64,000 bases of DNA from Sphyrna mokarran (lineage: Eukaryota), in assembly GCA_024679065.1 (NCBI GenBank), contig JAGIQG010000009.1, positions 85,746,001-85,810,000 of the forward strand, read 5' to 3'. Positions 38,829 through 63,600 of this stretch are shown here, one piece after another. Every line of letters starts with the position of its first letter. The stretch's first letter is position 1. The notes below the pieces were generated by a model. The model ran no database searches and was not told the DNA's origin. It saw only the letters and a program-made list of their open reading frames with translations. Position numbers and translations under genes: made by a program.

Positions 38829-38875
38829 TTAGGCAGTAGCAGAAGAATTTGATGAAGATTCTGCTTTGTCAGAAG
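38829..38875 (-). CDS. UAA: MHC class I exon 7 coding part (TSDKAESSSNSSATA-stop); exon ends at 38827
   Basis: tttttttgttaacag acceptor; Ser-rich tail resembling the class I SDSAQGSD tail; TAA at 38831-38829, then AG|GTAC donor. Confidence 0.88.
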
Positions 38876-39125
38876 CTGTTAACAAAAAAAAACAAGCATT
38901 ACAAAACTGTTCACCAACAGTGAGCCACAGACACAAAGAGGGTCACAATTACAGAGGGGGCCAGAGGTTGACACGTAGAAACACAAGAGAATGGACGTCT
39001 CACACACACACAAAAGGGAGACATCACATACCAATGAAGATAACAATAAACCAATGACTGTACACAGAGTGCAAGTAATGTTTCCTGCTCTTAGATAAAG
39101 ATGCAGTGATTTGAGGCACACTTAC

Positions 39126-39158
39126 TCTTTGCTGGATTGTAGCCAGTCTTCTGCCCTG
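39126..39158 (-). CDS. UAA: MHC class I exon 6 (cytoplasmic, AGQKTGYNPAK)
   Basis: 33 bp between ttgttttacag and A|GTAAGT. Keeps phase 1 and carries the conserved class I G-Y-x-x-A tyrosine motif. Confidence 0.88.
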
Positions 39159-40193
39159 CTGTAAAACAAGGAATTCTCAGTGAGCAGAGAACAACATTCA
39201 GAGAGGAGACACAATCATTTTCTCTCTCCCAGCCAGGATCACACACAAAGGAAGATAAATACATTATAATGGGAGGAGACTATTCAGGGTCATAGAAGTG
39301 GTTTTGACATTCAATGAGATCATAGCTAATCTACAATCTGACTCCCAGCCAGTGAAAGCAGTGTCTTCCCATATATTCTCATTACCTTAAATTTCATTAG
39401 ATCATTTCTCAGCTTCCAAGATTGAAGAGAATACATTCCTAACTTTTTAAAAAATCTCTCACCTTTTCAGCCAAGCTACACTCCTCTGAAGGCAAATATC
39501 TTCTTCCTATAGTGTTAAGCCCAAAGCTGCTCCCAGTATTTCAGGTGTGGTCAAACCAGAACTTCTCGAAGAAGTGTCTTCCCCACTACCAAAATTACCT
39601 CTTCTCCCCCACCCTGATTCTTCCCTCCAAATAGAAAAGCAGTAATATTTTTGACTAATAATTTTTTTCTGAACCTGTAACCAGCGAGATGAATAACAGG
39701 AATCTAGTAGGTTTTGTAGATCTGGACTTCCAGGAGGCATTTGATAAGATACCACACGAAAGGTTAATACACAAGGTTTGGTCACATGGGATTAGGAGTA
39801 ATTTGTCATCTTGGATAGAAGATTGGCTAACAAAAGGAAAGCAGAGAGGGTAAATTAGTCATGTGGTTGGCATGATGTTTATACTGGGGTGCATAGGGTT
39901 CGGTGCTCAGGGGTCAACTACTTACAATCTACATTAATAATGACTTGAATACAGGGATAGAAGGTACCATAGCCAAATTGGTAGATGATAGATACCAAAA
40001 TAGGTGGGATGGTAAGTTGCGATAACAAAATAAGAAATTTACAAATGATCACCCAAGGCTAGAATTGAACACAGCTCCCTGGCACTATGAAGCAGCAGTG
40101 CTTGCCACAGTGCTGCCCACAGGAATCTGGGTCTCAACTGTTCACAGTAACCTTGATAATTGTCGCTGCAACAAAGATGAGTGTCATTGGAGA

Positions 40194-41950: not shown

Positions 41951-44721
41951 AACGGAGACATTTCCTCTACAATTTAAACAGACATTAAAAAAAACATTGG
42001 AGCTATTATTTATCTATATTGGGTTAATTGAGCTTTTAAAAGAAAGTTAGCAAGTGTATGCTAATAGGGGACAAAATTTGAGCTGTGACTATTGAAGATT
42101 TACATTTATGATAACTATAACACCAGCTAAACGTGTTAAAACTAGGATCATATTCTGAAAGAAAATAAATAGTGCTGCAATAGTATTTGGATTAAGGTCT
42201 GGAAACATGTGAGGCAAAAGACCAGATAAGAATAGGAAGCCCTATTCAAATGTCCATCCTCTGCTTAAAATCCCAAATCTCAATAGAATAGACAAGATTG
42301 AGCTGGTAGAAACCTCTCTTAGCATTACCAAAAAAAAAACCCAAATAAATCCAAGAGAAATCTTCTTAAAATACAGAATCAGTATTAGATTTCTCCTACA
42401 AAGGGGAATAAAAAAAGCTAGCTAAAACTCAAATATATATTAATATTATGCAACAGGCAAGGACAATCAGAAGGAAATTGAAGCCATGAAAAAAAATAGC
42501 TGGTGAAGCACAAACATGTTCAGATACACACTTGGATAAAATCTCCCTCTCAAAACTGAGTTGTATCTCTCAAGTCCAAGCTATGGGTTTGAATTTTGTG
42601 AAGTTTTGATAACTTTTGAATACTTGTAATGAAGAAGGACAGAGTTTAGTTATTTTGTGTGTAATGAAGTTTAATGCCACGTGTAATTTTGTGGTAAATT
42701 GGGTCAGCACAGTAAAGGAAACATTTTGTGCAATAAATTTAAGAGTTCGAGTGTCTTTTACAGGTTCTAAGATAACAAGGTCAGTAATTGACCTCAAATT
42801 TCATGAGTTTAAGCTTTATTTAATATCCTCTCAAGAGATTTGATCAAATGTTTTTTCGTACGGATAAAATTCACGTGTTCACTTACATTAATCACCTCTT
42901 CAAACACTTCATTCGGTCATTTGACGCAAGTTCTCTTTGCAAATCCATGCTGTCTCTGAGCAGCCGAAAAGACTAGTGTTCAATCACCCCATCTTTAATG
43001 CTAGATTCTCATCATTTCCTGATACTCACAATAGGATAATGGATCTATAATTCCCTGCTCTCCCCCTTTCACTTTTCTCAATAGTGAAGGGAGAGGAGTA
43101 TAAATTTTCCAATCTAAAAGGAATGGTTATACAATTGAAAAAGCTTTGGAGATTGCTATTCAAACATTACTCTTATCTGGCCTTGGGGTTTAGTCGCCAT
43201 CCAATGTCATTTAATATTAATGAGAATTGTGTTGAGTCCCTGGCACACAGAGAACATTAAATTTACTGACACACTGCTTTCTTCCTCTACAGAAGATACT
43301 GACGTGTTCCCCATTTTGTATTCCCACTGACAATATACATCAGTTTTCAAAGGGCCCAATGTTTCAAACTTTTCACCTCATCTACTTCATGCGTTAATTT
43401 TGCTACCCCACACAAATTTCTTTTCATATCTATTTTTGTAACTTTCTGGGAAGGCCAGCACAGTGCTAACACCACTGAAGTAATAATCCAGAGTCCAGGT
43501 GAATGCTGTGGAGACAATGGTTCAAATACCACTGTCAGTTATTGTAAAAATCCATCTGGTTCATAATGTCCTTTAAGGAAGGAAATCTGTCATCCTTACC
43601 TGGTTGAGCCTAGGTGACTTTTAGCAACTGCCCTTGAAATGGCCTGGTAAGTAATTAGGGATGGGCAATAAATGCTGGCCTTACCACATTCCATAAAGGA
43701 ACAAAATTTGCTTTTTTTGGTCTGTTTCCCATTTACCGGGGTCTGTGCAATTTTTTTGTATCTTTTTCTTTTATGTTGTCTGTTGAATTGTTCACGACTA
43801 CCATTTGTGGCAAGTGGAGCTTTTGGATTTTAGGAGTCTAAATTGGGTATTCACTTTGGAAACAAAATCAAGGCAGATTACCACCTGAATGGTTGTAAAT
43901 TGGGAGAGGGGAGTGTGCAGTGGGACCTGGGTGTCCTTCTGCACCAATCATTGAAGATAAGCATGCAGGTACAGCAGGTGGTAAAGACAGCAAATGGCAT
44001 GTTAGCTTTAAAAGGTTGAGTACAGGAGCAGGGATGTGTTGTTGCAATTATACAGGGCATTGATGAGGCCACACCTAGAATACCGTGTGCAGTTTTGGTC
44101 TTTTTTTCTAAGGAAGGATGGTCTTGTTCTTGACAGTGCAGTGAAATTTACCAGGCTAATTCTGGGATTCTAGAATTTGTATTAGAAAACTATGCCACAA
44201 ACATTTGGAAATTTCACAGTCTGTCTGATAGTTGCATCTCTGTTTTTCCTAATTTCTATGAAAGAATAAACCTCACACCCAGTCTTTGCTACCTATTACA
44301 ACAGCTGTACTAGTGTCAATGCACAACTCCTAGTCCAGCCTTCAATCCTTTTCCTCTTTTCATTCTATTCAGAATGACTCCACTTCATACCTCTCATTAT
44401 ATGAGTTCTGAATTTATCCATAATCATTAAGGTTACACCATCCTATCATTTTCCTGATCTTATTTCTGAGTATCTTTAATTCCTGATTATTGAGTTGCAA
44501 TGCCCACCAGGTCATACCCTCCAAGATGAACTTAAACTTCCAATTCATACAACAGATGCTTTGTAGAAAGATGCTCATCTGGGCAAATCCATTCCAATGA
44601 TTCAATTTCACCATCTCTCTCCAAATGCAACTGTTTAACTTTGTGAAGTTTTGCCATTCCATGGAGTTCAAAAGTTATAATCTCACGTACCTCCCCCACC
44701 CACTAGGTGCCCATTTCCTAC

Positions 44722-44826
44722 CTTTCTTCTTGTACAGGATGACACCCACAACAGTGAGAGCAACAAGCACCAGGACAGCAATAATAATGACAATAATAAC
44801 TGGGAACCTGGAGTCAGCTTTTGGCT
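44722..44826 (-). CDS. UAA: MHC class I exon 5 (connecting peptide and transmembrane)
   Basis: 105 bp with polypyrimidine+cag acceptor and G|GTAGG donor. Translates EPKADSRFPVIIVIIIAVLVLVALTVVGVILYKKK (hydrophobic span followed by a basic stop-transfer). Confidence 0.92.
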
Positions 44827-45052
44827 CTGAGGAGAAAAAAAAACAGATAAAAAGAGTTACATAACAGGCATCAGGAACATCATACAGCACAAAGACCAAT
44901 TAAATTATAATATCTGAAAATACTGGGAAGTCTATGGTGTTGGATATGAGTCCCACTGGGATACAATGAACTCCTTCACACAGCTCAGCACTGACCCTCT
45001 CCCATAGCGAGGGAGACAGACTGGATCCTCACACATGGGGAGATGGTCTTAC

Positions 45053-45316
45053 CATAAAACACCACCAATTTCTGGTTCAGCCCGGCATGATCCACCACAC
45101 AGGAGAACTTGGCCGAGTCGCCCGGTTCAAAGTCGGTCTGTTTCTCCATCTGGTAAGTGCCATCGTGGTTGGGGCGGATCCCACTGGAATAAGGCTCATC
45201 GGCAGCCGCCTGATCTCGGTGCAGTTTCATCTCGATAGACTGAGGGTAGAAGCCAGTGGCCACACAGGAGAGTTTCTTACTGTCACCCCGCCGGGTAAAG
45301 GAGACGGTGGGAGCAA
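45053..45316 (-). CDS. UAA: MHC class I exon 4 (alpha-3, Ig C1 domain)
   Basis: 264 bp. Translates VAPTVSF...LSCVATGFYPQSI...RPNHDGTYQ...FSCVVDHAGL, with C1-set motifs CxATGFYP, DGTYQ and FxCxVxH; AG/GT boundaries. Confidence 0.97.
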
Positions 45317-45435: not shown

Positions 45436-45708
45436 CGGCTCTCAGCTCTCTCTCTCCATACCGCAGGTATTTATTCAGCCACTCGATGCAGATTCCCTCC
45501 AGGTAACCCTTCTGCTGCTGATTCCCTGCTTGGTTCTTATCCCACTTGGCCTTGGTGATCTCCCCCCATTGTACCGGGGTCACCCACACGCTCCGCTCCT
45601 TATCGAAGCTCACGAAGTCTTTCCCGTCCCAGCCGAACTGGAAAAATCCCGCGGTGCTGCCGTCCTTCCGCAGCTCACAGCCATACATCACCTGATAGGT
45701 GTGGATCC
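45436..45708 (-). CDS. UAA: MHC class I exon 3 (alpha-2 domain)
   Basis: 273 bp, cag acceptor and G|GTGAG donor. Translates GIHTYQVMYGCEL...WDGKDF...ITKAKWD...GYLEGICIEWLNKYL, with the C101-C164 pair, T143, K146, W147, Y159, W167 and Y171 of classical class I. Confidence 0.97.
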
Positions 45709-45909
45709 CTGTCAATCACACAGAAACAGCCAATCACAGAGAGGAACAGGAGACCCCCACCCGCCCAGCGGGCTCGGGCAGCCAATAGGAAACAGCGGGA
45801 TGAAGCGCGCACGCGCGCCCCCACTCCCGCCAGCCAATCAGGTTTAACAGGAACCCGGATGCCCCGCCCCCCGGCTCAGTGCGGGGGGGGGGGGGAGATG
45901 GTCACTTAC

Positions 45910-46170
45910 CGCCGCTCTGATTGGTCCGCTCCGAGAGGATCTGAATATTGACTTTTCCCATCTGCTCCCAGCCCTGCCGCTTCTGTGTCTCCTCATCCCA
46001 GTAATCGGGTCCCTCACTGTCCGCCATCCAGTGCTGCCGGGGAACCATCTTCTTCAGAACACTGCCATAATGAACAAACTCCAGCTCATCCACATAACCG
46101 ACTACCACAAACTCCGGCAGACTGGGAACCGGGGTCATTGATGTGTGGAAATACCGGAGAAAGTGAGAGT
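45910..46170 (-). CDS. UAA: MHC class I exon 2 (alpha-1 domain)
   Basis: 261 bp between tttttcag acceptor and G|GTAAGT donor. Translates DSHFLRYFHTSMTPVPSLPEFVVVGYVD...DYWDEETQ...SERTNQSG, with H3, Y7, D29, Y59, R84 and the N86 glycosylation sequon NQS. Confidence 0.97.
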
Positions 46171-46446
46171 CTGAAAAACACAGATCAGGACATTAACCTC
46201 AAACACACACAATAATCCCCCCCCCCCAACACAGAGAGAGAGAGATCAGGACATGAACCCCAAACCCATCCCCACTCCCAAACACACAGAAAGGGGCAGA
46301 GACACAGCCAGATCTCCCGGTCTCTGCTCACTCCGCTTCATCACCACCAGCGCCGGGGCAGGATCAGTCTGTCTCTCCCAGTGAGCGGCTCCCTCAACCC
46401 AACACAACCCGGAGAACAGCTTCGCAACATCACTGTCCACACACTG

Positions 46447-48312
46447 AACCCCACCGACACAACACACAGGGCCCCCTACAAATAAACCCCACCGACACAA
46501 CACACAGGGCCCCCTGCAAATAAACCCCACCGACACAACACACAGGGCCCCCTGCAAATAAACCCCACCGACACAACACACAGGGCCCCCTGCAATAAAC
46601 CCCACCGACACAACACACAGGGCCCCCTACAAATAACCCCACCGACACAACACACAGGGCCCCCTGCAAATAAACCCCACCGACACAACACACAGGGCCC
46701 CCTGCAAATAAACCCCACCGACACAACACACAGGGCCCCCTGCAAATAAACCCCACCGACACAACACACAGGGCCCCCTGCAAATAAACCCCACCGACAC
46801 AACACACAGGGCCCCTGACAAATAAACCCCACCGACACAACACACAGGGCCCCCTACAAATAAACCCCACCGACACAACACACAGGGCCCCCTGCAAATA
46901 AACCCCACCGACACAACACACAGGGCCCCCTGCAAATAAACCCCACCGACACAACACACAGGGCCCCCTACAAATAAACCCCACCGACACAACACACAGG
47001 GCCCCCTACAAATAAACCCCACCGACACAACACACAGGGCCCCCTACAAATAAACCCCACCGACACAACACACAGGGCCCCCTACAAATAAACCCCACCG
47101 ACACAACACACAGGGCCCCCTGCAAATAAACCCCACCGACACAACACACAGGGCCCCCTGCAAATAAACCCCACCGACACAACACACAGGGCCCCCTGCA
47201 AATAAACCCCACCGACACAACACACAGGGCCCCCTGCAAATAAACCCCACCGACACAACACACAGGGCCCCCTGCAAATAAACCCCACCGACACAACACA
47301 CAGGGCCCCCTACAAATAAACCCCACCGACACAACACACAGGGCCCCCTACAAATAAACCCCACCGACACAACACACAGGGCCCCCTACAAATAAACCCC
47401 ACCGACACAACACACAGGGCCCCCTACAAATAAACCCCACCGACACAACACACAGGGCCCCCTACAAATAAACCCCACCGACACAACACACAGGGCCCCC
47501 TGCAAATAAACCCCACCGACACAACACACAGGGCCCCCTACAAATAAACCCCACCGACACAACACACAGGGCCCCCTACAAATAAACCCCACCGACACAA
47601 CACACAGGGCCCCCTGCAAATAAACCCCACCGACACAACACACAGGGCCCCCTGCAAATAAACCCCACCGACACAACACACAGGGCCCCCTTACAATAAA
47701 CCCACCGACACAACACACAGGGCCCCCTGCAAATAACCCCACCGACACAACACACAAGAAATAAACACACACAACAGGGCCCCCTACAAATAAACCCCAC
47801 CGACACAACACACAGGGCCCCTGCAAATAAACCCCACCGACACAACACACAGGGCCCCCTAGCAAATAAACCCCACCGACACAACACACAGCCCCCTACA
47901 AATAAACCCCACCGACACAACACACAGGGCCCCCTGCAAATAAACCCCACCGACACAACACACAGGGCCCCCTACAAATAAACCCCACCGACACAACACA
48001 CAGGGCCCCCTACAAATAAACCCCACCGACACAACACACAGGGCCCCCTACAAATAAACCCCACCGACACAACACACAGGGCCCCCTACAAATAAACCCC
48101 ACCGACACAACACACAGGGCCCCCTGCAAATAAACCCCACCGACACAACACACAGGGCCCCCTGCAAATAAACCCCACCGACACAACACACAGGGCCCCC
48201 TACAAATAAACCCCACCGACACAACACACAGGGCCCCCTGCAAATAAACCCCACCGACACAACACACAGGGCCCCCTGCAAATAAACCCCACCGACACAA
48301 CACACAGGGCCC
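46447..48312. repeat. 38-bp minisatellite, about 49 copies, in class I intron 1
   Basis: Unit AAATAAACCCCACCGACACAACACACAGGGCCCCCT(G/A)C. Confidence 0.97.
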
Positions 48313-50019
48313 ATGTAGATAATGTTCAATCACACTGAGCACCATCAGGCTGTTATTTTTTGTAACAGTATACCGTTTATATTTAACCCCCTGTTGTCAA
48401 TGGAAACTCCTTTCTCCCATTCTCTCTTTCAGCTTCTGTTGCATCTCATTGGCCAGATCCTAATAGTTCTAATATCTACAGAGTTCCAATGAGTTTTTCA
48501 CTTTTTATGCATATTCATGTTTCCAACAATTCCAAATTACTTCTCCAAAATGTCATTCTCCTGAAGCTTTCCCTGCTTTTCTCCAAAAGGACACCTTACC
48601 TCACCAAAAGGATGCCCCTTGGCATCCGTCCCAAGAATTCTGTCTATTTAAGAATTTATCCTGAGAGCCCTATAGCCCACATGTCATGTTTTAGACATTC
48701 CACTGACAATTGGATTTGTTTGAAAGTTGTTGTATTTTTACAGGTGCACTGTCTCTTTGAAGCACAGGTGTGCAAAGACAACACAACTCCATTCCTGCGC
48801 CAAAAATGGTGGGTGCCGGTTTCAGGGGCTGGATTCTGAAATTGGGTTTCCTAAGCCGGGATCCTCTCTGTATTTCTGAGAATTGGATCCTTAGTGTCAT
48901 AGTTGCCCCAGAGATGAGATTCGGACACTAAAACTGCTGAGCTCCCCTCTAATGTCAGCTGATCTCAGCTGTTCTTCTGCTGAAATCCTCGCTCATACCT
49001 TCCCCACCATTAGACTTGACAGTTCAACACTCTCCTCGCTGATCTCCCACACTCTACCTCTGGAAACTTGAGACAATCCAAAACTCTGCCACCAACATTT
49101 TAACTCATGGCAAATCTCCTTTCCCCTATCACTTCCTGTGCTTACTGACTGGCTCACAATCATGCGACAGCCCCATGTTAAAATTCTCATCTTGTTTTCA
49201 AATCCCTCCATGGCCTTGCCCCTTCCTATAACTTCCTCCACCCACACAACCCTCTGAGATCTCTGAACTCCTTTAATTCTGGCCTCTTGAACATCCTGAT
49301 TTGATTTCTTCACTATTGCTGTCTGCGTCTTCAACTGGTATAACCTCAAGATCTCAAATAACTTCCATCAACCTCCTCCCCCCCACATCTCACTTCCCCC
49401 CTTCTACAATCTTCCCCCTCTCTATCTCACTTTCTCCTCCTGAGCATTTTGAGCAGGTCACTAACACAGAATATTAAGGATTGTCTATGGGTTTATTCCA
49501 TAGATTTCCAGGAGGTTTTCCATAAGGTTTCACACGAAAGACTGTTATTAAAAATGAGAGTGAATAGGAATGGATATGGATGGGGTCTTTTGACTTGGGC
49601 TAGGAATAGTTTTGGGAGGTCGGAGGCAGGGATTGGGGTTAATCGGTAAGTAATCTGATTAGTGGGATCTGTACTGGGGCCATAACTGTTCATCACATTT
49701 ATAAATGTATCAGTGAAGGAAAGTTGTGTATCAAAGTTATAAATGTTCAGATGGTCAATAAGTTGCATCGAAGGGAACAGAAAGTTCTAAAGGGATATTA
49801 ACAGATACTGTGAGTGGGTGAAACTACAACAGATTGAGTTTAATGTGGGATAGCCAGATCATCCACTGTGGAACTAAAACAAACAAATTTCTGGCATGGT
49901 CTATAAAATCTATGGAAAAGAATCCCAGAAAAGAGGGCATTTGGTCCTTTGGAGAATCAGCGCAGACCCAAAAAAGCAGCAATGTACCCTGGCTTTCCTC
50001 CTTGCCCTATCTCTGTAAC

Positions 50020-53019: not shown

Positions 53020-53352
53020 TTAATTGAATCCTTGCGGTGCCAAAGGAAGCCATTTGGCCCATCAAGTCTGCAGAGCACTCTACCTTTGAGACATCACTTT
53101 ATCTAGGCTCAGTCCCCTGTCCTATCCTTGTAACCCCACATATTCAGCCAGCTAATCCCCATAACTGGCATATCTTTGGACAATCGCTTGGCCAATCCAC
53201 TTAACCCGCACATCTTTGGAGTGTGGGAATAAACTGGAGCACCCAGAGGAAACCCAATAGACAGGGGGAGAATATGCAAACTCCACACTGTCACTCAAGG
53301 CTGGAATTGAACCCAGGTCCCTGGCGCTGTGAGACAGCAGTGCTAAACCACC
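53020..53352 (-). mobile_element. V-SINE (HE1-like) about 40 bp into class I intron 1
   Basis: GGTTTAGCACTGCTGTCTCACAGCGCCAGGGACCTGGGTTCAATTCC head, V-domain and CR1-like tail. Confidence 0.85.
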
Positions 53353-53393
53353 AGTACCCAGATACTGAGATCTTCTCAGAACCCATTACTCAC

Positions 53394-53442
53394 CTGCAGA
53401 GACCCCTCCACAGAGAAGGGTGAGTAGAATTAACCTCAGCAT
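53394..53442 (-). CDS. UAA: MHC class I heavy chain, exon 1 (signal peptide MLRLILLTLLCGGVSA)
   Basis: ATG at 53442 in context GCAACAATG; hydrophobic leader; phase-1 donor G|GTGAGT. It joins exon 2 to give mature N-terminus DSHFLRYF, and lies about 180 bp downstream of the proximal SXY module. Confidence 0.9.
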
Positions 53443-53593
53443 TGTTGCCTTAAATGAAGAGTTTGGTAGGAATTCTGTGTTTCTCCTGCTCTTTCTCACA
53501 GTCTGTGTCTGTGTGTGTGCCTCCCAATTCTCCTCTGCACCCTTGTAAGCTCCTTACCCACTGCTGTCTGCCCTAAACTCAGATTCCTCCACA

Positions 53594-53601
53594 CTGATTG
53601 G
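53594..53601 (-). promoter_or_regulatory. CCAAT box downstream of the proximal Y box
   Basis: Minus strand CCAATCAGTGT about 20 bp after the Y box, as in classical class I core promoters. Confidence 0.65.
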
Positions 53602-53620
53602 TTCACTGGGGTATCAGTGT

Positions 53621-53685
53621 CCAATCAGAATAGAAAGAACCAGTGAGTCATCAGTCTCCGGGTAGAAGAGTCCTGGACAGGTTGA
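53621..53685 (-). promoter_or_regulatory. Proximal S-X1/X2-Y module of the class I promoter
   Basis: Minus strand reads TCAACCT -16 nt- CCCGGAGACTGATG (overlapping TGACTCA) -20 nt- CTGATTGG; canonical spacing. Confidence 0.85.
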
Positions 53686-53723
53686 GTTCCATGTCAAAAT
53701 CAACTTTTTGGAAAGTGCTGCAT

Positions 53724-53788
53724 CCAATCAGAGAATTACTGTCAATGACATCATCAGTTACCAGGTAGAATAAACTGTAGCAGGTTAG
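53724..53788 (-). promoter_or_regulatory. Distal S-X1/X2-Y module of the class I promoter
   Basis: Minus strand reads CTAACCT -16 nt- CCTGGTAACTGATG (overlapping TGATGTCA) -20 nt- CTGATTGG; canonical spacing. Confidence 0.85.
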
Positions 53789-53798
53789 AGAACTGAAC

Positions 53799-53809
53799 AA
53801 ACTGAAAGT
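53799..53809 (-). promoter_or_regulatory. ISRE/IRF site immediately upstream of the distal S box
   Basis: ACTTTCAGTTT (plus strand AAACTGAAAGT), at the position where mammalian class I promoters carry the ISRE. Confidence 0.65.
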
Positions 53810-55475
53810 ACTGTGATCCTCCACCAGACAGAGGGAAAAACATTCACAGCAGGAGTAGGCCATTCGGCCCCTTAAGCCATTCAATAAGATCATGGCTGAC
53901 CTGATTGTGGTCTCAGTTCCACTTCCCATTTCCCCCTCCTCACGGTCCCCCAGCTACCTTGCCCCAGATTCAACCACCGATCAGAAATCTGTCTAACTCA
54001 GTGTGGACATGTTCAATGACTCAGCTTCCATTGCTCTCTGGGAAAGGGATATTTCTCCTTATCGCCATCTCAAAAGAGAGATGTCTTATTTTAAACAGTG
54101 TTCCACAATCTCCCACATCTTCCAGTATCTTCCCTGTCAAATCTTCTCAAGATCTAATCTATTTTAATAAGATCACTCCTCTAAACTGCAATGGATACAG
54201 GCCCAAAATATTCAACATTTTTCAACAGATAAACCCTTCATCGCAGGAATGAATTGAATGAACCTTCTCTGAAATGCAAGGACTTATATTCCTTTTTAAC
54301 TAAGGAGACTGAAACTACTCATTATTCCAGATGTGGTCTCATCAAAGCCCTGGACAGCTCAGTGAAACTTCTATTTTCGTATTTCATTCCTTTTGAATAA
54401 ACACCAACACTCTATTTGCCTTCCTGACCACTTCTACCTGCAGAATAACTTTCTCTGATTGGTGAATCAGGACAGCCAAATCCCTCTGTGCCCACTGAGT
54501 TCTGTAATCTCTCCATTTCAATGGTTTGTGTTTGCTCCCGTCAACATGGGCAAGTTCACATTTTCTCACATTATACAACTCTCTGTCTATGCGAGACAAC
54601 TTCCTTTCCCTACCTACCTCAGTATTATTTAGTAAATTTAGTGACTATACATGCCGTCCTTTCACCCAAATCATTTTCCTAAATTGTTAATAGTTGAGGT
54701 CCCAGCACTGTTGATCTCTGCTTTCTCAGACCTCGATTAGTTACATCTTACCAACATGAAAAACACCCATTTAACCCATTCTGTTTCCTGTTAGCTTTTT
54801 CTGTATTCATGGGCCAAGGGCCCTCTTTCTGCACTGTAGGGTTCTATAATTCTTTGATTTAAAGGATATGAGTGTCACTGGCTGGGCTCTAACTGCCCTC
54901 TATCCCTGATATTTAACAGTCAACCACATTGCTGTGGATCTGGAGTCACATGTAAGCTAGACCAGGTAAGGAAGGCAGATTTCCTCCTCTAAAGGACATT
55001 AGTGATGTATTTTTACAACAATCAACTATGTTTTTATAGTGACAAGACTTCTTTTTTTTTATAAAATTCAAATTTCACCATCTGCAATGATGGGATTCAA
55101 ACCTGGGTCCCCAGAGCATTATCCTGGGTCTCTGGATCACTCATCCAGTGACAATACAACTACCCCATCTAATTTATATTTTATATCTAATATATTACCC
55201 CTTACACAATGAACTGTTCCCATTCAGCCCTTGGGCCCTGCTACACCATTCAATCAGATCCGTATCTCATTTCCATTCACCTTACTTTTGCTCCCTGACC
55301 CCTCATACCCCAACCCCCAAAACAATCAATCCATCTCAGTCTGAAAATCTTCAATTGTTCTAAATTCCCCAGTCTCCCAAGGGAGAAAATTACAGATTTC
55401 TATAACCCTTTTGTGTGAAAATGGTTTCTGCGTGTCTATCCAATCAATTCCTTGTTAACATTATTAACATTTCAA

Positions 55476-56066: not shown

Positions 56067-56182
56067 TGACGTTAATGACGAAACAGAAACAGGTTTGATC
56101 AACAGCTTCAAAATCAGGGACTTTCCGACTGAGACAAACACAAGGGAGGGGCAGAGAGCAAAATAACAGCGCGGGGAATTCC
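56067..56182. promoter_or_regulatory. Candidate distal enhancer: two CRE/ATF half-sites, ISRE, two NF-kB sites
   Basis: TGACG at 56067 and 56076; GAAACAGAAAC 56080-56090; GGGACTTTCC 56117-56126; GGGGAATTCC 56173-56182. Confidence 0.6.
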
Positions 56183-56390: not shown

Positions 56391-56489
56391 GATCAGAGAG
56401 TGGGAGCAGTGAGTGACACCAACAACATATAAGTAAATTGTTAGACTTTGACAACAGGGTCAGAGCAAAAAAACCACTGAGAGATCTCA

Positions 56490-59400
56490 CCTCTCAGTCC
56501 CTCACTCTGGGGCCTCTCTCCCATCAGTCCCTCACTCTGAGGCCTCTCTCCCATCAGTCCCTCACTCTGGCCTCTTCTCCCATCCCTCATCTCTGGGCTC
56601 TCTCTCCCATCAGTCCCTCACTCTGGGGCCTCTCTCCCATCAGTCCCTCACTCTGGGGCCTCTCTCCCATCAGTCCCTCACTCTGGGGCCTCTCTCCTAT
56701 CAGTCCCTCACTCTGAGTGCCCTCACTCTCTGCTTCTCTCCCTCAGTCCCTCACTCTGGGGCCTCTCTCCCATCAGTCCCTCACTCTGGGGCCTCTCTCT
56801 CCTCAGTCCCTCACTCTGGGGCCTCTCTCCCATCAGTCCCTCACTCTTTGGCCTCTCTCCCCCACTCAGTCCCTCACTCTGTCTCTCCCATCAGTCCCTC
56901 ACTCTGGGGCCTCTCTCTCCTCAGTCCCTCACTCTGGGGCCTCTCTCCCCTCAGTCCCTCACTCTGGGGCCTCTCTCCCATCAGTCCCTCACTCTGGGGC
57001 CTCTCTCCCCTCAGTCCCTCACTCGGGGCCTCTCTCCCATCAGTCCTCACTCTGGGGCCTCTCTCCCTCAGTCCCTCACTCTGGGGCCTCTCTCCCATCA
57101 GTCCCTCACTCTGGGGCCTCTCTCCCTCAGTCCCTCACTCTGGGGCCTCTCTCCCTCAGTCCTCACTCTGGGGCCTCTCTCCCATCAGTCCCTCACTCTG
57201 GGGCCTCTCTCCCATCAGTCCCTCACTCTGGGGCCTCTCTCCCATCAGTCCCTCACTCTGGGGCCTCTCTCATCCAGTCCCTCACTCTGGGCCTCTCTCT
57301 CCCTCAGTCCCTCACTCTGGGGCCTCTCTCCCATCAGTCCCTCACTCTGGGCCTCTCTCTCCTAGTCCTCACTTGGGGCCTCTCTCCCCTCAGTCCCTCA
57401 CTCTGGGGCCTCCTCCCCTCAGTCCCTCACTCTGGGGCCTCTCTCCCTCAGTCCCTCACTCTGGGGCCTCTCTCTCCTCAGTCCCTCACTCTGGGGCCTC
57501 TCTCCCATCAGTCCCTCACTCTGGGGCCTCTCTCCCATCAGTCCCTCACTCTGGGGCCTCTCTCCCATCAGTCCCTCACTCTGGGGCCTCTCTCCCATCA
57601 GTCCCTCACTCTGGGGCCTCTCTCCCATCAGTCCCTCACTCTGGGGCCTCTCTCCCATCAGTCCCTCACTCTGGGGCCTCTCTCCCATCAGTCCCTCACT
57701 CTGGGGCCTCTCTCCCCTCAGTCCCTCACTCTGGGGCCTCTCTCCCATCAGTCCCTCACTCTGGGGCCTCTCTCCCATCAGTCCCTCACTCTGGGGCCTC
57801 TCTCCCATCAGTCCCTCACTCTGGGGCCTCTCTCCCATCAGTCCCTCACTCTGGGGCCTCTCTCCCATCAGTCCCTCACTCTGGGGCCTCTCTCCCATCA
57901 GTCCCTCACTCTGGGGCCTCTCTCCCATCAGTCCCTCACTCTGGGGCCTCTCTCCCCTCAGTCCCTCACTCTGGGGCCTCTCTCCCCAGCTCCCTCACTC
58001 TGGGGCCTCTCTCCTCAGTCCCTCACTCTGGGGCCTCTCTCCCTCAGTCCCTCACTCTGGGGCCTCTCTCCCATCAGTCCCTCACTCTGGGGCCTCTCTC
58101 CCATCAGTCCCTCACTCTGGGGCCTCTCTCCCATCAGTCCCTCACTCTGGGGCCTCTCTCCCCTCAGTCCCTCACTCTGGGGCCTCTCTCCCATCAGTCC
58201 CTCACTCTGGGGCCTCTCTCCCATCAGTCCCTCACTCTGGGGCCTCTCTCCCATCAGTCCCTCACTCTGGGGCCTCTCTCCCATCAGTCCCTCACTCTGG
58301 GTCTTCTCTCCCAGTCCCTCACTCTGGGCCTCTCTCCCATCAGTCCTCACTCTGGGGCCTCTCTCCCATCAGTCCCTCACTCTTGGGCCTCTCTCTCCTC
58401 AGTCCCTCACTCTGGGGCCTCTCTCCCATCAGTCCCTCACTCTGGGGCCTCTCTCCCTCAGTCCCTCACTCTGGGGCCTCTTCCCATCAGTCCCTCACTC
58501 TGGGGCCTCTCTCCCTCAGTCCCTCACTCTGGGGCCTCTCTCCCATCAGTCCCTCACTCTGGGGCCTCTCTCCTCAGTCCCTCACTCTGGGGCCTCTCTC
58601 CCATCAGTCCCTCACTCTGGGGCCTCTCTCCCATCAGTCCCTCACTCTGGGGCCTCTCTCCCTCAGTCCCTCACTCTGGGGCTCTCTCTCCCACAGTCCC
58701 TCACTCTGGGGCCTCTCTCCTCAGTCCCTCACTTCTGGCCTGTCCTCCCTCCTCAGTCCCTCACTCTGGGGCTTCTCTCCTCAGTCCCTCACTCTGGCCT
58801 CTCTCCCATCAGTCCCTCACTCTGGGGCCTCTCTCCCTCAGTCCCTCACTCTGGGGCCTCTCTCCCCTCAGTCCCTCACTCTGGGGCCTCTCTCCCATCA
58901 GTCCCTCACTCTGGGGCCTCTCTCCCCTCAGTCCCTCACTCTGGGGCCTCTCTCCCATCAGTCCCTCACTCTGGGGCCTCTCTCCCATCAGTCCCTCACT
59001 CTGGGGCCTCTCTCCCCTCAGTCCCTCACTCTGGGGCCTCTCTCCCCTCAGTCCCTCACTCTGGGGCCTCTCTCCCATCCCCTCACTCTGGGGCCTCTCT
59101 CCCTCAGTCCCTCACTCTGGGGCCTCTCTCCCTCAGTCCCTCACTCTGGTCCTCTCCTCAGTCCCTCACTCTGGGGCCTCTCTCCTCAGTCCCTCACTCT
59201 GGGGCCTCTCTCCCATCAGTCCCTCACTCTGGGGCCTCTCTCCTCAGTCCCTCACTCTGGGGCCTCTCCTCAGTCCCTCACTCTGGGGCCTCTCTCTCCT
59301 CAGTCCCTCACTCTGGGGCCTCTCTCCTCAGTCCCTCACTCTGGGGCCTCTCTCCCATCAGTCCCTCACTCTGGGGCCTCTCTCCCATCAGTCCCTCACT

Positions 59401-60625
59401 CTGGGGCCTCTCTCCCATCAGTCCCTCATTGGGGCCTCTCTCCCATCAGTCCCTCACTCTGGGGCCTCTCTCTCTCCTCAGTCCCTCACTCCTTGGCCTT
59501 CTCCCCTCACTGCCTCATTCTCTCCTCAGTCCCTCACTCTGTGCTCTCCCATCAGTCCCTCACTCTGGGCCTCTCTCCCATCAGTCCCTCACTCTGGGCC
59601 TCTCTCCCATCAGTCCCTCACTCTGGGCCTCTCTCCTATCAGTCCCTCACTCTGGGGCCTCTCTCCTCTCACTCTAGGTCTTCCCCCCTCCAGTCCCTCA
59701 CTCTTAGTCCCTTCCCCCATCAGGTCATCTCTCTCCCATCAGTCCCTCACTCTGGGGCTCTCTCCCTCAGTCCCTCACTCTGGGGCCTCTCTCCCATCAG
59801 TCCCTCACTCTGAGTCTTCCCTCCCCTCAGTCTGGGGCCACTCTGTGCCTTCAGTCCCTCACTCTGGGGCCTCTCTCCCCAGTCCCTCACTCTGGGGCCT
59901 CTCTCCCATCAGTCCCTCACTCTGGGGCCTCTCTCCCATCAGTCCCTCACTCTGGGGCCTCTCCTCCTTCAGTCCTCACTCTGGGGCCTCTCTCCCCAGT
60001 CCTCACTCTGGGGCCTCTCTCCCCATCAGTCCCTCACTCTGGGGCCTCTCTCCCATCAGTCCTCACTCTGGGGCCTCTCTCCCCATCAGTCCCTCACTCT
60101 GGGGCCTCTCTCCCTCAGTCCCTCACTCTGGGGCCTCTCTCCCCACAGTCCCTCACTCTGGGGCCTCTCTCCCCAGTCCCTCACTCTGGGGCCTCTCTCC
60201 CTCAGTCCCTCACTCTGGGGCCTCTCTCCTCCATCAGCCTCACTCTGGGGCCTCTCTCCCTCAGTCCCTCACTCTGGGGCCTCTCTCCCTCAGTCCCTCA
60301 CTCTGGGGCCTCTCTCCCATCAGTCCCTCACTCTGGGGCCTCTCTCCTCATCAGTCCCTCACTCTGGGGCCTCTCTCCCATCAGTCCCTCACTCTGGGGC
60401 CTCTCTCCCCAGTCCCACTCTGGGCCTCTCTCCCATCAGTCCCTCACTCTGGGGCCTCTCTCCCATCAGTCCCTCACTCTGGGGCCTCTCTCCCATCAGT
60501 CCTCACTCTGGGGCTCTCTCTCTCCATCAGTCCCTCACTCTGGGGCCTCTCTCCTCCATCAGTCCCTCACTCTGGGGCCTCTCTCCCATCAGTCCCTCAC
60601 TCTGGGGCCTCTCTCTCCCCCAGTT
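56490..60625. repeat. 30-bp minisatellite, about 135-140 copies
   Basis: Unit CAGTCCCTCACTCTGGGGCCTCTCTCCCAT; homogeneous core with degenerate edges. Confidence 0.97.
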
Positions 60626-60626
60626 C

Positions 60627-63600
60627 ATAGAACATAGAACATAGAACATAGAACAATACAGCACAGAACAGGCCCTTCGGCCTTCGATGTTGTGCCGACC
60701 AAAATAAAAAGCAATGCCCCTCCTAACTAAACCATTCCCTTATCATCCATATACTTATCAACTAACCTCTTAAACGCCACCAAACTTGGCGCATCTACAA
60801 CAGCTGCAGGCAGGGCATTCCACTCCCTAATCACTCTTTGAGTAAAGAACCTACCTCTGATATCCGTCCTATAACTCATACCCCTTAATTTAAAGTTGTG
60901 TCCCCTCGTGCTAGCTTTTTCCATCCTAGGAAAAAGGCTATCACTGTCCACCCTATCCAAACCTCTAATTATCTTATATGTTTCAATAAGATCCCCCCTT
61001 AGCCGCCTCCTTTCTAACGAAAACAACCTCAAATCCTTCAACCTCTCTTCATAGGACCTGCCCTCCATACCAGGCAACATCCTAGTAAACCTCCTCTGTA
61101 CCCTCTCCAATGCCTCCACATCTTTCTTATAATGTGGCGACCAGAACTGCACACAATACTCCAAGTGCGGCCGCACTAGAGTTTTGTACAGCTGCAACCT
61201 GATGCTGCGGCTCCTAAATTCAATCCCCCTACCAATAAAAGCTAAGACTCCATAAGCCTTCTTAACAACTTTATCCACTTGACTGCCTACTTTCAGGGAT
61301 CTATTGACACATACACCAAGATCCTTCTGTTCCTCAACACTATTAAGAGCCCTACCATTAGCCCTATACTCTACACATTTATTGTTCCTGCCAAAGTGCA
61401 TTACCTCACACTTTTCCACATTAAACTCCATTGCCACCTCTCGGCCCAGCTCTGCAACTTGTCCAAGTCACTCTGTAAACTAAAACACCCCTCTTCACTA
61501 TCTACCACACCACCAACTTTAGTATCATCTGCAAATTTACTGATCCATCCCTCAATACCCTCATCCAGATCATTTATAAAAATTACAAACAGCAGGGGCC
61601 CCAAAACAGACCCGAGGCACACCACTCGTCACCGAACTCCACGATGAAAATCTCCCATCAACCACCACCCTCTGTCTTCTATCTGCCAGCCAATTTCTAA
61701 TCCAATTAGCTAAATCACCCTCTATTCCACACATCTGCATTTTCTGTAGAAGTCTTCCATGGGCCACCTTATCAAAAGCCTTACTAAAGTCCATATATAC
61801 TACATCAACCGCCTTACCCCCATCCACCTCTCTGGTCACTTTCTCAAAAAACTCAATGAGGTTAGTAAGGCATGACCTACCCTTCACGAAACCATGCTGA
61901 CTAAATCCCCCCCCAAAAAAAAAAAAAACAAAAAAAAAACATTCATTTCTCTCTAAATAACTATAAATCCAATCCCTAATAATTCTCTCCATACCTTGCC
62001 CACACAGAAGTAAAACTCACTGGCCTATAATTCCCAGGAAGTTCTCTCTTCCCCTTCTTAAACAATGGGACCACATTCGCCATCCTCCAGTCCTCCGGAA
62101 CCACACCCGTAACCAACGAGGACCTGAAGATCAGAGCCAGAGGCTCTGCAATCTCCTCTCTTGCCTCCCAGAGAATCCTAGGGTAAATCCCGTCCGGCCC
62201 AGGGGACTTATCCAACTTCAAACCCCGAGAATTTCTAACACATCCTCCCTCATCTACTACAATACTCCCCAATTTGCACCCCTGTACCTCAGTGCTCTCC
62301 ACAGCTACATTTCCAGCACTCTGCGTGAATACCGAAGAGAAATTTACAAAAATTATTCAGTGCTCACCAATCTCTTCAGGCTCCACTCACAACTTCCCAC
62401 TGCTGTCTATGACTGGCCCTAATCTTGCCCTAACCAATCTTCTATTCTTAACATATCGAAAGAAAGCTTTAGGATTCTCCTTAATCCTATCAGCCAACAT
62501 CTTCTCGTGTCCCCTCTTAGCTCTCCTCAATTCACTTTTTACCTCCTTCCTAGCTAATCTATAGCTATCCATTGCACTACCTGAGCCTTCAAGCCTCATC
62601 CTGACATAAGCCTCCTTTTTCTTCTTAACCAGCAAATCAACTCTTTTCGTACACCAAGGCTCTCTTACTCGTCCATTTCCTCCCTGCCTGACAGGGACAT
62701 ACTTATCAAGGACTCGCAGCAGCTGCTCCTTGAATAAGCACCACATTCCAGATGTTCCCAGTCCCTGTAGTTCCCTAGTCCAATCTATGCACCCTAATTC
62801 TCTCCTGATGGCCTCATAATTACCCTTCCCCCAGCTATAACTACTGCCCCCAGCTTCATGCCTATCCCTATCCATCACTAAGGTGAACGTAACCGAATTG
62901 TGGTCACTATCACCAAAATGTTCACTAACTTCCAAGCCTAACACCTGGTCTGGCTCATTGCCCAGCACCAAATCCAATGTAGCCTCACCTCTAGTTGGCC
63001 TATCTACATACTGAGTCAAAAAACCTTCCTGCACACTCTGTACGAAAACTGACCCCTCTAACGAGCTAGAGCTATAGCTATTCCAATCAATATTAGCAAA
63101 GTTAAAGTCCCCCATCACAATTACCCTACTACTTTCACTCCTAATCAGAATTGACTTCGCAATCCTTTCCTCAACCTCTCTAGAACTATTAGGAGGTCTG
63201 TAAAAGACTCCCAACAGGGTGACCTCTCCTCTCCTGTTTCTAATATCAGCCCATACTACCTCAACAGACAAGTCCTCATCAAACTTCTTTTCGATCACCG
63301 TGATACAGTCTTTGACCAGTAACGCCACTCCTCCCCCCCTTCTACCCCCTTCTCTACTCCGACTAAAGCATTTGTACCCCGGAACCTGCAACATCCATTC
63401 CTGTCCCTGCTCTACCCAAGTCTCTGAAATGGCCACAACATCGAAGTTCCAGGTACTGGTCCAAGCTGCAAGTTCCTCCCCCTTATTGCGAATACTCCTT
63501 GCATTAAAGTATACGCATCTCAAACCATGCCCCACCCCACCCGTACGCCGCTGTGTTTTACAACTCTCCTCTATAACCCCCTTACTCTCATCCCTCTCAG

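What the first reader, a model, noticed from the sequence alone, without database searches (positions are those of the whole stretch)
53594..53809. Tandem duplicated, perfectly spaced S-X-Y modules in a shark classical MHC class I promoter
Seen: two complete modules 103 bp apart (Y boxes at 53621 and 53724). Each has an S box, 16 nt, a 14-nt X1 ending ACTGATG with overlapping X2, 20 nt, then CTGATTGG. The spacer sequences have largely diverged while the boxes and spacer lengths are identical, which suggests selection on both copies. The X2 sites differ: CRE-like TGATGTCA in the distal module, AP-1-like TGACTCA in the proximal one. An ISRE precedes the pair and a CCAAT box follows it. Known: mammalian class I and II proximal promoters have one SXY bound by RFX/CREB/NF-Y that recruits NLRC5 or CIITA, with S-box sequence contributing to specificity. 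Inference: a dual-enhanceosome promoter, possibly one module per transactivator. I am not aware of this being described, but cannot search.
Basis: partly seen in the sequence, partly recalled or inferred. Interest (0 to 1): 0.85.

Follow-up and report, generated by a model that had tools for sequence, protein, structure and literature searches.

The report
Two SXY modules in shark class-I promoter
The promoter of an expressed shark MHC class I gene carries two complete copies of the S-X-Y control module that switches on MHC genes in mammals, but only the copy nearer the gene shows clear evolutionary constraint among close relatives.

Summary
On the minus strand, upstream of the leader exon (ATG 53442), lie two motif sets: S core AACCTG, pyrimidine tract plus 14-nt X1 ending ACTGATG, overlapping X2, 20 nt, then Y box CTGATTGG. 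All anchors are offset by exactly 103 bp. An ISRE-like element lies upstream and a CCAAT box downstream.

- **Not chance or artefact:** 0 matches were expected by chance. A 556-bp short-read contig from a separate run spans both copies.
- **Gene:** classical-type, closest to Triakis UAA. RNA contigs join this leader exon to the window's alpha-1 exon.
- **Between the copies:** 32 of 36 box columns are identical. The other columns (20 of 67) are at background. If this was a duplication, it is old and both box sets were long kept.
- **In two related species:** both copies are present. The proximal boxes have 0 of 38 changes. The distal boxes have 3 of 39, one of which alters the CRE-like X2. That is no different from the flanks (27 of 221).

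"One module per transactivator" has no support, because both S cores are identical. Other scan notes mention class I promoter duplications elsewhere in this genome, none on this stretch. This is a new variant of a known kind; interest is moderate.

The parts
53798..53807 (-). ISRE-like element TTTCAGTTTG, upstream of the distal module
   Evidence: It matches my search pattern TTTCnnTTTC at 9 of 10 positions. Organism B carries a T>A change inside it, at 53805.
53781..53786 (-). Distal S-box core AACCTG
   Evidence: It is identical to the proximal core and offset by 103 bp. No change is listed in organisms B or C.
53752..53770 (-). Distal pyrimidine tract TTCTA plus X1 box CCTGGTAACTGATG
   Evidence: Organisms B and C carry A>G inside X1 (53759) and A>C in the tract (53766), both on the minus strand.
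53746..53753 (-). Distal X2, CRE-like TGATGTCA, starting at the last TG of X1
   Evidence: Organisms B and C read TGATGTTA, from the change at 53747.
53724..53731 (-). Distal Y box CTGATTGG (inverted CCAAT)
   Evidence: It lies 20 nt after X1. No change is listed in B or C.
53678..53683 (-). Proximal S-box core AACCTG
   Evidence: No change is listed in B or C.
53649..53667 (-). Proximal pyrimidine tract TTCTA plus X1 box CCCGGAGACTGATG
   Evidence: No change is listed in B or C. All three DNA runs show extra contig depth over 53603-53664.
53644..53650 (-). Proximal X2, AP-1/TRE-like TGACTCA, starting at the last TG of X1
   Evidence: No change is listed in B or C.
53621..53628 (-). Proximal Y box CTGATTGG
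   Evidence: It lies 20 nt after X1. No change is listed in B or C.
53597..53601 (-). Forward CCAAT box (CCAATCAG, the reverse complement of the Y-box 8-mer), 19 nt after the proximal Y box
53394..53517 (-). Exon 1. RNA-contig coverage runs from 53517 to the donor. ATG at 53442-53440, leader MLRLILLTLLCGGVSA, GT donor at 53393-53392.
   Evidence: In one search, run X2 has depth only over 53394-53517. Adapter letters follow 53517, and a loose end at 53394 matches the alpha-1 exon start. Confirmed.
45910..46170 (-). Alpha-1 exon
   Evidence: It is 67-72% identical to the Triakis, Mustelus and Heterodontus sequences aligned (59% to the nurse shark chain).
45436..45708 (-). Alpha-2 exon
   Evidence: It is 81% identical to the Triakis allele P0167.
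45052..45316 (-). Alpha-3 exon (ends approximate)
44720..44826 (-). Connecting-peptide and transmembrane exon (ends approximate)
38835..39159 (-). Two cytoplasmic-tail exons, encoding AGQKTGYNPAK near 39159-39127 and SDKAESSSNSSATA-stop near 38880-38835
   Evidence: The peptides match the Triakis and Mustelus tails seen.
53820..53943 (.). High-copy repeat bounding the promoter upstream. A second high-copy, SINE-like repeat bounds it in intron 1 at 53200-53354.
   Evidence: In one search, summed depth is 10^3 to 10^6 in the repeats, against 12-40 over most of 53355-53819 in run X1 (a short simple repeat at 53479-53540 reaches about 340).

Best explanation
Positions 53594-53809 (minus strand) are the proximal promoter of an intact, transcribed, classical-type (UAA-like) MHC class I gene of a houndshark-like shark.

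The promoter holds two full S/py-X1/X2/Y modules in the same orientation and register, 103 bp apart. An ISRE-like element lies 5' of the pair, and a CCAAT box lies between the pair and the transcript start.

The most likely history is an old tandem duplication of a roughly 103-bp ISRE-S-X-Y unit. The ISRE has decayed in the proximal copy.

The most likely mechanism is inferred by analogy with mammals. Each X1 would be bound by an RFX5-type complex, each X2 by a bZIP factor (ATF/CREB or AP-1), and each Y by NF-Y. Together these would form the platform that recruits an NLRC5-type transactivator.

The proximal module sits about -166 to -104 from the 5' end of the RNA contigs. It is the principal, constrained platform. 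The distal module sits about -269 to -207, beside the ISRE-like element. It is an auxiliary or partly redundant second platform whose boxes were kept long after the spacers had randomised. It tolerates changes among close relatives.

Shown here: the motifs, their spacing, non-randomness, single-copy status, presence in three species, and expression and splicing of the gene. Inferred: factor binding, the role of each module, and origin by duplication.
For: - **Motifs and offset:** exact motifs with an identical 103-bp offset.
- **Chance:** 2 matches against 0 expected in 100 shuffles.
- **Copy against copy:** box columns 32 of 36 identical; non-box columns 20 of 67, equal to background; clustering p=0.0013.
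- **Assembly:** a 556-bp contig of DNA run X1 covers 53322-53877 with 1 difference and no gap.
- **Relatives:** contigs from organisms B and C span both modules, and no length change is listed inside or between them.
- **Substitution rates, organism B:**
  - Whole module region: 10 events in 216 bp, against 27 in 221 bp of flanks (p=0.0055).
  - Proximal half: 3 of 116 (p=0.0023).
  - Proximal boxes: 0 of 38 (P=0.007).
- **Expression:** RNA-run contigs cover only 53394-53517 and continue into the letters that begin the window's alpha-1 exon.
- **Gene type:** residues Y7, Y59, R84, T143, K146, W147, Y159 and Y171 are conserved (numbering recalled; columns seen). The nearest named proteins are Triakis scyllium MHC class I antigens.
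- **Literature, passages read:**
  - S and Y lie 16 and 20-22 bp from X in NLRC5 targets (PMC4374748).
  - The S-Y module is a constrained 65-70 bp unit with a pyrimidine tract 5' of X (PMC2278383).
  - Class I promoters combine EnhA/ISRE with SXY (PMC3987962).
Against: - **Distal constraint not shown:** the distal half has 7 events in 100 bp (p=0.18 against flanks). The distal boxes have 3 of 39 (P=0.28). Proximal and distal halves do not differ significantly (p=0.19).
- **No box depletion overall:** within the module region, 4 of 10 events fall in boxes (92 of 216 positions; p=1.0).
- **Signs of decay in the distal copy:** the distal X2 differs from a perfect CRE at a CpG position and changes again in B and C. 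The ISRE-like element is imperfect and altered in B.
- **Limits of the comparison:**
  - Only relatives about 12% diverged could be compared.
  - Their contigs could be paralogues rather than orthologues.
  - For organism C, only the differences it shares with B were listed.
  - About 18 gap letters in the B and C contigs were not itemised. I assume they lie in the simple repeat at 53479-53540.
- **Origin:** spacer identity at background means duplication is not demonstrable.
- **No binding or chromatin data** exist here.
- **Transcript start:** contigs cannot fix it.
Confidence: 0.55

Rival explanations
1. Each module is a separate enhanceosome for a different transactivator, for example NLRC5 on one and CIITA on the other. 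Alternatively, each gives a different signal input: CRE on the distal module and AP-1 on the proximal one.
For: - The X2 sites differ in the window: TGATGTCA against TGACTCA.
- The distal X1 contains GGTAAC. This fits the general RFX half-site as I recall it. The proximal X1 has GGAGAC.
- Both modules have complete, canonical spacing.
Against: - In mammals the S box decides NLRC5 versus CIITA (PMC4374748 passages). Here the two S cores are identical.
- The CRE-like X2 and the GGTAAC half-site are both altered in organisms B and C, at 53747 and 53759. The supposed distinguishing features are therefore not conserved.
- No data exist on shark NLRC5 or CIITA specificity.
Confidence: 0.1
2. Only the proximal module works. 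The distal one is a non-functional relic of a duplication and is now drifting.
For: - In organism B, the distal boxes have 3 of 39 changes and the distal half 7 of 100. Neither differs from the flank rate of 27 in 221.
- The proximal boxes have 0 of 38.
- Extra contig depth, most likely from paralogous promoters, covers 53603-53664 (the proximal X-Y region) and part of the ISRE zone. It does not cover 53665-53788.
Against: - The spacers between the copies are at background identity, yet 32 of 36 box columns and both spacer lengths are still identical.
- A copy that had been neutral since the duplication should have lost its boxes and its register as well.
- The Y box, S core and X1 end are intact in all three species, and no indel is listed between them.
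Confidence: 0.28
3. The second module did not arise by duplication. It was assembled independently, or brought in by recombination with another MHC promoter. The shared register would then reflect only the functional constraints on any SXY module.
For: - Non-box identity between the units is 20 of 67, equal to background.
- Unchecked scan notes report stacked or exchanged class I promoter and leader units elsewhere in this genome.
Against: - The identical pyrimidine tract TTCTACC and the weak similarity in the ISRE zone (10 of 26 columns) are more easily explained by common descent.
- The two units directly abut each other.
Confidence: 0.12
4. Chance motif matches, or an assembly artefact.
For: None found.
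Against: - 0 matches were expected in 100 shuffles.
- Identity at offset 103 is 38 of 67, against a maximum of 30 at other offsets.
- A short-read contig from run X1, and contigs from two other organisms, span both copies.
- Copies only about 50% identical cannot be created by repeat mis-assembly.
Confidence: 0.02

Closest known systems
Mammalian MHC class I proximal promoter (EnhA/ISRE, then the SXY module, then CCAAT), transactivated by NLRC5 through RFX, CREB/ATF1 and NF-Y
   Same: - The order ISRE, S, X1, X2, Y, CCAAT lies upstream of the start.
- X2 overlaps the end of X1.
- The Y box is an inverted CCAAT.
- S-to-X spacing is about 16 nt and X-to-Y spacing 20 nt. These match the values given for NLRC5 targets (PMC4374748 passages; PMC3987962 passages).
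   Different: - There are two complete modules in tandem instead of one.
- No kB sites lie directly 5' of the ISRE-like element, where a repeat now abuts it. kB-like sites lie about 2.3 kb further upstream.
- The 5' UTR is longer, about 75 nt.
- Factor binding is untested.
MHC class II S-Y module bound by RFX, CREB and NF-Y and used by CIITA
   Same: A constrained composite module of about 65-70 bp with a pyrimidine tract 5' of X (PMC2278383 passages). Here each module spans 63 bp from the S core to the Y box and carries the tract TTCTACC.
   Different: The gene is class I. The S-core sequence could not be compared with the class II consensus, because that is shown only in figures, which are not held.
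Short motif duplications in MHC class II promoters (dolphin DQA T-box, orca DRA 11-mer, S-motif duplications in mouse and human)
   Same: Regulatory motifs of MHC promoters can duplicate locally and persist (PMC6155461 passages).
   Different: Those are 11-22 bp duplications of a single motif. Here a whole S-X-Y unit of about 103 bp is present twice with its internal spacing preserved.
Teleost MHC class I promoters with W/S, X2 and Y motifs
   Same: SXY-type motifs occur in class I promoters outside mammals (PMC7573153 passage).
   Different: That passage mentions no duplicated module. This window comes from a cartilaginous fish. I found no description of a class I SXY in cartilaginous fish.

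Membership tests
MHC SXY (S-Y) enhanceosome module | S, X1, X2 and Y in fixed order and orientation upstream of the transcript start | tested here: met
   Both modules read S core, py-X1, X2, Y on the coding (minus) strand. They lie upstream of the RNA-contig 5' end at 53517.
MHC SXY (S-Y) enhanceosome module | Tight spacing: S about 16 bp and Y about 20-22 bp from X (PMC4374748). Whole module about 65-70 bp (PMC2278383). | tested here: met
   From the end of X1 to Y is 20 nt in both modules. From the S core to X1 is 15 nt, or 16 nt if S ends at AACCT. From the S core to the end of Y is 63 bp in both. Box edges are a matter of definition, and the papers' logos are figures that are not held.
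MHC SXY (S-Y) enhanceosome module | Pyrimidine-rich tract at the 5' end of X (PMC2278383 figure legend) | tested here: met
   TTCTACC is identical in both copies.
MHC SXY (S-Y) enhanceosome module | X2 is an ATF/CREB-type site next to or overlapping X1 (PMC3987962) | tested here: met
   The proximal site is TGACTCA. The distal site is TGATGTCA, one mismatch from a CRE. The distal site reads TGATGTTA in organisms B and C.
MHC SXY (S-Y) enhanceosome module | Y box is an inverted CCAAT bound by NF-Y | tested here: met
   CTGATTGG occurs in both modules, with no change listed in B or C. This is a motif match only.
MHC SXY (S-Y) enhanceosome module | S-box sequence of the NLRC5 or CIITA type | tested here: inconclusive
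   Both modules share AACCTG at the expected distance. The published S logos are figures or supplements that I could not see. Any resemblance to mammalian class I S boxes is recalled, not tested.
MHC SXY (S-Y) enhanceosome module | Occupied by RFX5/RFXAP/RFXANK, CREB/ATF1 and NF-Y, and dependent on NLRC5 or CIITA | not testable with these tools
   No ChIP, ATAC or reporter data are available.
MHC SXY (S-Y) enhanceosome module | Boxes conserved in related species | tested here: inconclusive
   Proximal boxes have 0 of 38 changes (P=0.007), so the feature is met there. Distal boxes have 3 of 39 (P=0.28), so constraint is not shown there. Only one fully listed relative was available.
Classical (UAA-type) shark MHC class I gene | Conserved residues that bind the peptide termini, and full exon structure | tested here: met
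   Invariant columns include Y in LRYF, Y in DYW, R-T-N-Q, T-K-x-K-W, GYLEG and KYL. These were seen in alignments against Triakis alleles, Mustelus, Heterodontus and the nurse shark 6LUP chain. All exons were found.
Classical (UAA-type) shark MHC class I gene | High polymorphism and broad, high expression | not tested
   There is one RNA-like run with spliced contigs. I have no population data. A second class I gene with the same leader lies nearby (note s1-887462).

The most novel reading that the evidence does not exclude
Both modules are occupied in vivo and act together. In this reading, a tandem pair of RFX/bZIP/NF-Y platforms sits about ten helical turns apart and recruits two transactivator complexes to one class I promoter. 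The arrangement would be a conserved feature of UAA promoters in this shark lineage. It would show that the exact SXY geometry (16 and 20 nt) dates to the last common ancestor of jawed vertebrates and can be multiplied.
Probability: 0.3. Interest if true: 0.65.

Novelty: new variant of a known kind. Interest (0 to 1): 0.5.

Why it matters
The SXY enhanceosome is the central switch of MHC expression in mammals. Its presence in a shark class I promoter, with box order and spacing as in mammals, would push the RFX/NF-Y/NLR-transactivator logic back to the origin of adaptive immunity.

A naturally doubled module also offers a simple test system. It could show whether enhanceosome platforms act additively, redundantly or with divided inputs. 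No paper I could search describes SXY modules in cartilaginous-fish class I promoters, or a complete tandem SXY. Subscription journals and supplements were not searchable.

Tried and rejected
- **Fishing for relatives through a spurious ORF:** I searched with the 92-aa ORF that overlies the distal module, residues 37-92. It shared no words with any protein.
- **Metagenome scan:** the X1-N20-Y pattern gave 9 loci (L001-L009). GC was 0.42-0.62 and none had an S core upstream. I judged them chance microbial matches and dropped them.
- **Other copies in the window:** there is no second copy of the promoter or leader, and only one class I gene.
- **Tandem Repeats Finder:** it sees no array here. 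The repeat finder reports only the 20-nt X1 pair.
- **Bacterial promoter and terminator scan:** irrelevant and empty.
- **Scan-notes look-up by sequence:** blank.
- **Rejected readings:**
  - Chance.
  - Assembly artefact.
  - Origin of the modules from a transposable element. Positions 53355-53819 are single-copy in depth apart from a short simple repeat, and the flanks are high-copy.
- **Not used as evidence:** my recollection that mammalian class I S, X and CCAAT regions resemble the proximal shark module. No tool here holds those sequences.
- **Not seen:** the figures and supplements of PMC4374748 (S3-S5 Figs) and PMC2278383 (Fig 6A). They hold the motif logos and may bear on the S-box comparison.

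Full report
**1. What is there**

The finding lies on the minus strand. Read that way, the sequence runs as follows, in plus-strand coordinates:
- an ISRE-like TTTCAGTTTG at 53807-53798;
- a distal module: AACCTG at 53786-53781, TTCTA plus CCTGGTAACTGATG at 53770-53752, TGATGTCA at 53753-53746, then 20 nt from the end of X1 to CTGATTGG at 53731-53724;
- a proximal module with the same layout: AACCTG at 53683-53678, TTCTA plus CCCGGAGACTGATG at 53667-53649, TGACTCA at 53650-53644, and CTGATTGG at 53628-53621;
- then 19 nt and a forward CCAAT box at 53601-53597.

Every anchor pair is offset by exactly 103 bp. Each module spans 63 bp from the S core to the Y box.

**2. More than chance, and not an artefact**

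- The X1-end/Y pattern occurs only at these two places in the 64-kb window. None of 100 shuffles gave a match.
- Ungapped identity at offset 103 is 38 of 67, against a mean of 16.6 (sd 3.6, maximum 30) at other offsets.
- A 556-bp Logan contig of DNA run X1 (organism A) covers 53322-53877 with one difference and no gap. That run may come from the individual used for the assembly. In any case, copies only about 50% identical (52 of 103) cannot arise from repeat mis-assembly.
- Summed contig depth shows that 53355-53819 is single-copy apart from a short simple repeat at 53479-53540. It lies between high-copy repeats at 53200-53354 and 53820-53943. The modules are therefore not part of a transposable element.

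**3. The gene**

Only one class I gene lies in the window. Its exons are:
- leader: ATG at 53442, peptide MLRLILLTLLCGGVSA, split codon at 53394, GT donor;
- alpha-1 at 46170-45910, alpha-2 at 45708-45436, and alpha-3 at about 45316-45052;
- the transmembrane exon at about 44826-44720;
- two cytoplasmic exons near 39159 and 38880.

Intron 1 is about 7.2 kb.

- The alpha-2 exon finds shark class I proteins.
- The best ordinary full-length hit, P0020, is a Triakis scyllium "MHC class I antigen" in a cluster of 13 such alleles. I recall these as the classical UAA alleles of Okamura 1997, a paper I did not see.
- A Mustelus asterias model marked LOW QUALITY (P0168) has the identical leader. Its alpha-1 and alpha-2 are only 72% and 71% identical to the window. 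It is probably the neighbouring gene described in scan note s1-887462.
- Alignments of alpha-1 and alpha-2 against Triakis, Mustelus, Heterodontus and the nurse shark 6LUP chain keep the tyrosines, the R-T-N-Q motif, T-K-x-K-W, GYLEG and KYL. I recall these as the residues that hold the peptide termini.

"Classical-type" is therefore supported. Polymorphism was not tested.

**4. Expression and transcript start**

Run X2 is labelled only as a guess at RNA. It has depth of several thousand over 53394-53517 and none in the intron or upstream of 53540.
- Two of its contigs continue past 53394 into letters that equal the start of this window's alpha-1 exon.
- One contig ends at 53517 and is followed by adapter letters. 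The depth of the last bin fits coverage that stops there.

Contigs cannot prove a start, so I treat 53517 as the minimum 5' end. Relative to that point:

| Element | Position |
|---|---|
| CCAAT box | -84 to -80 |
| Proximal module | -166 to -104 |
| Distal module | -269 to -207 |
| ISRE-like element | -290 to -281 |

**5. Copy against copy**

In the 103-column ungapped alignment, the box columns are 32 of 36 identical. Box columns here mean the S core, the pyrimidine tract with X1 and the start of X2, and the Y box with two flanking bases. All other columns are 20 of 67 identical, against a background of 25.3% (p=0.23). Matches cluster more than in permutations (p=0.0013).

Two readings fit. 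The units may descend from an old duplication whose spacers have randomised while the boxes and lengths were kept. Alternatively, they arose separately under the same constraints. In both cases the distal boxes were maintained for a long time. The ISRE zone of the distal unit aligns weakly with the matching proximal stretch (10 of 26 columns). This fits a duplicated ISRE that decayed in the proximal copy.

**6. Across species**

Contigs of run X3 (organism B) and run X4 (organism C) span both modules at roughly 90-95% identity.

For B, the listed differences account for all gaps and for the expected number of substitutions outside the repeats, so I treat B as fully listed over 53355-53822. For C, only the differences it shares with B were shown, and 60 further rows were cut. 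About 18 gap letters in each of the B and C contigs are not itemised. I assume they lie in the simple repeat at 53479-53540.

Counts for B:

| Region | Events | Test against the flank rate |
|---|---|---|
| Flanks (intron start, 5' UTR and core, one upstream unique stretch) | 27 of 221 (12.2%) | reference |
| Module region | 10 of 216 | p=0.0055 |
| Proximal half | 3 of 116 | p=0.0023 |
| Distal half | 7 of 100 | p=0.18 |
| Proximal boxes | 0 of 38 | P=0.007 |
| Distal boxes | 3 of 39 | P=0.28 |

The three distal-box changes are shared by B and C (minus strand):
- X2 changes from TGATGTCA to TGATGTTA;
- X1 carries A>G, turning GGTAAC into GGTGAC;
- the pyrimidine tract carries A>C.

B alone also has T>A in the ISRE-like element. 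Proximal and distal halves do not differ significantly from each other (p=0.19). Within the module region, boxes are not depleted of changes (4 of 10 events in 92 of 216 positions, p=1.0).

All three DNA runs show extra depth over 53603-53664, and X1 also over 53789-53819, but none over 53665-53788. Paralogous promoters may therefore share the proximal X-Y region and the ISRE zone but not the distal module. This is a hint only.

**7. Comparison with what is known**

- Passages of Ludigs 2015 (PMC4374748) state that S and Y lie 16 and 20-22 bp from X in NLRC5-occupied promoters. They also state that spacing is critical and that the S box decides NLRC5 versus CIITA.
- Passages of Krawczyk 2008 (PMC2278383) describe the S-Y unit as a constrained 65-70 bp module with a pyrimidine tract 5' of X.
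- Passages of PMC3987962 give the class I layout of EnhA/ISRE plus SXY, with X2 as an ATF/CREB site and Y as the CCAAT or enhancer B box.
- A passage of PMC7573153 says that W/S, X2 and Y motifs occur in many teleost class I promoters.
- Passages of PMC6155461 report only short (11-22 bp) duplications of single motifs in class II promoters.

Both shark modules meet the architectural criteria. Factor binding cannot be tested here.

I found no paper on SXY in cartilaginous-fish class I promoters or on a complete tandem SXY. I saw listings only, apart from the passages named above. Subscription journals and supplements were not searched.

**8. Verdict**

This is a genuine, expressed class I promoter with two canonical SXY modules. 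The proximal one is clearly constrained. The distal one was maintained in the long run, but it is not distinguishable from neutral among close relatives, and its CRE-like X2 is not conserved. The idea of one module per transactivator has no support, because the S cores are identical.

My probabilities:

| Claim | Probability |
|---|---|
| This is a true SXY-type promoter | about 0.9 |
| Origin by duplication | about 0.8 |
| The distal module contributes measurably to transcription | about 0.5 |
| Division of labour between transactivators | about 0.1 |

Other notes of this scan (unchecked) mention duplicated or stacked class I promoter and leader units elsewhere in this genome. None concerns this stretch.

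Noticed in passing
window 45727-45838 (minus strand, intron 2): There are three ATTGGCTG boxes starting at 45838, 45786 and 45734. They are spaced exactly 52 bp apart in a GC-rich intron 2. Scan note s1-887489 reports the same pattern for the neighbouring class I gene, so it appears to be shared between paralogues.
   Followed up: partly
window 56067-56182 (minus strand): About 2.3 kb upstream of the modules there are two kB-like sites (GGAATTCCCC and GGAAAGTCCC), a perfect TTTCTGTTTC, and paired CRE half-sites. The order recalls the mammalian EnhA-ISRE unit. It may have been separated from the SXY region by repeat insertions. This is the subject of note s1-884571.
   Followed up: partly
window 46246-48345 (intron 1) and 56438-60630 (upstream): Two very large tandem-repeat arrays show strong strand skew. 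They give long spurious ORFs on both strands. One fills much of the 7.2-kb intron 1.
   Followed up: no
window 53603-53664: Summed contig depth is 2-3 times the single-copy level in all three DNA runs. A variant at 53640 is carried by the extra contigs. Other promoters in these genomes probably share the proximal X1-X2-Y stretch.
   Followed up: partly
window 38835-39159: The cytoplasmic-tail exons lie 5.5 kb downstream of the transmembrane exon. The gene therefore spans about 14.7 kb, most of it repeat-filled introns.
   Followed up: partly
window 53611: The window has G where run X1 (same organism code) and organisms B and C have A. This is probably a private allele of the assembled haplotype.
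   Followed up: no
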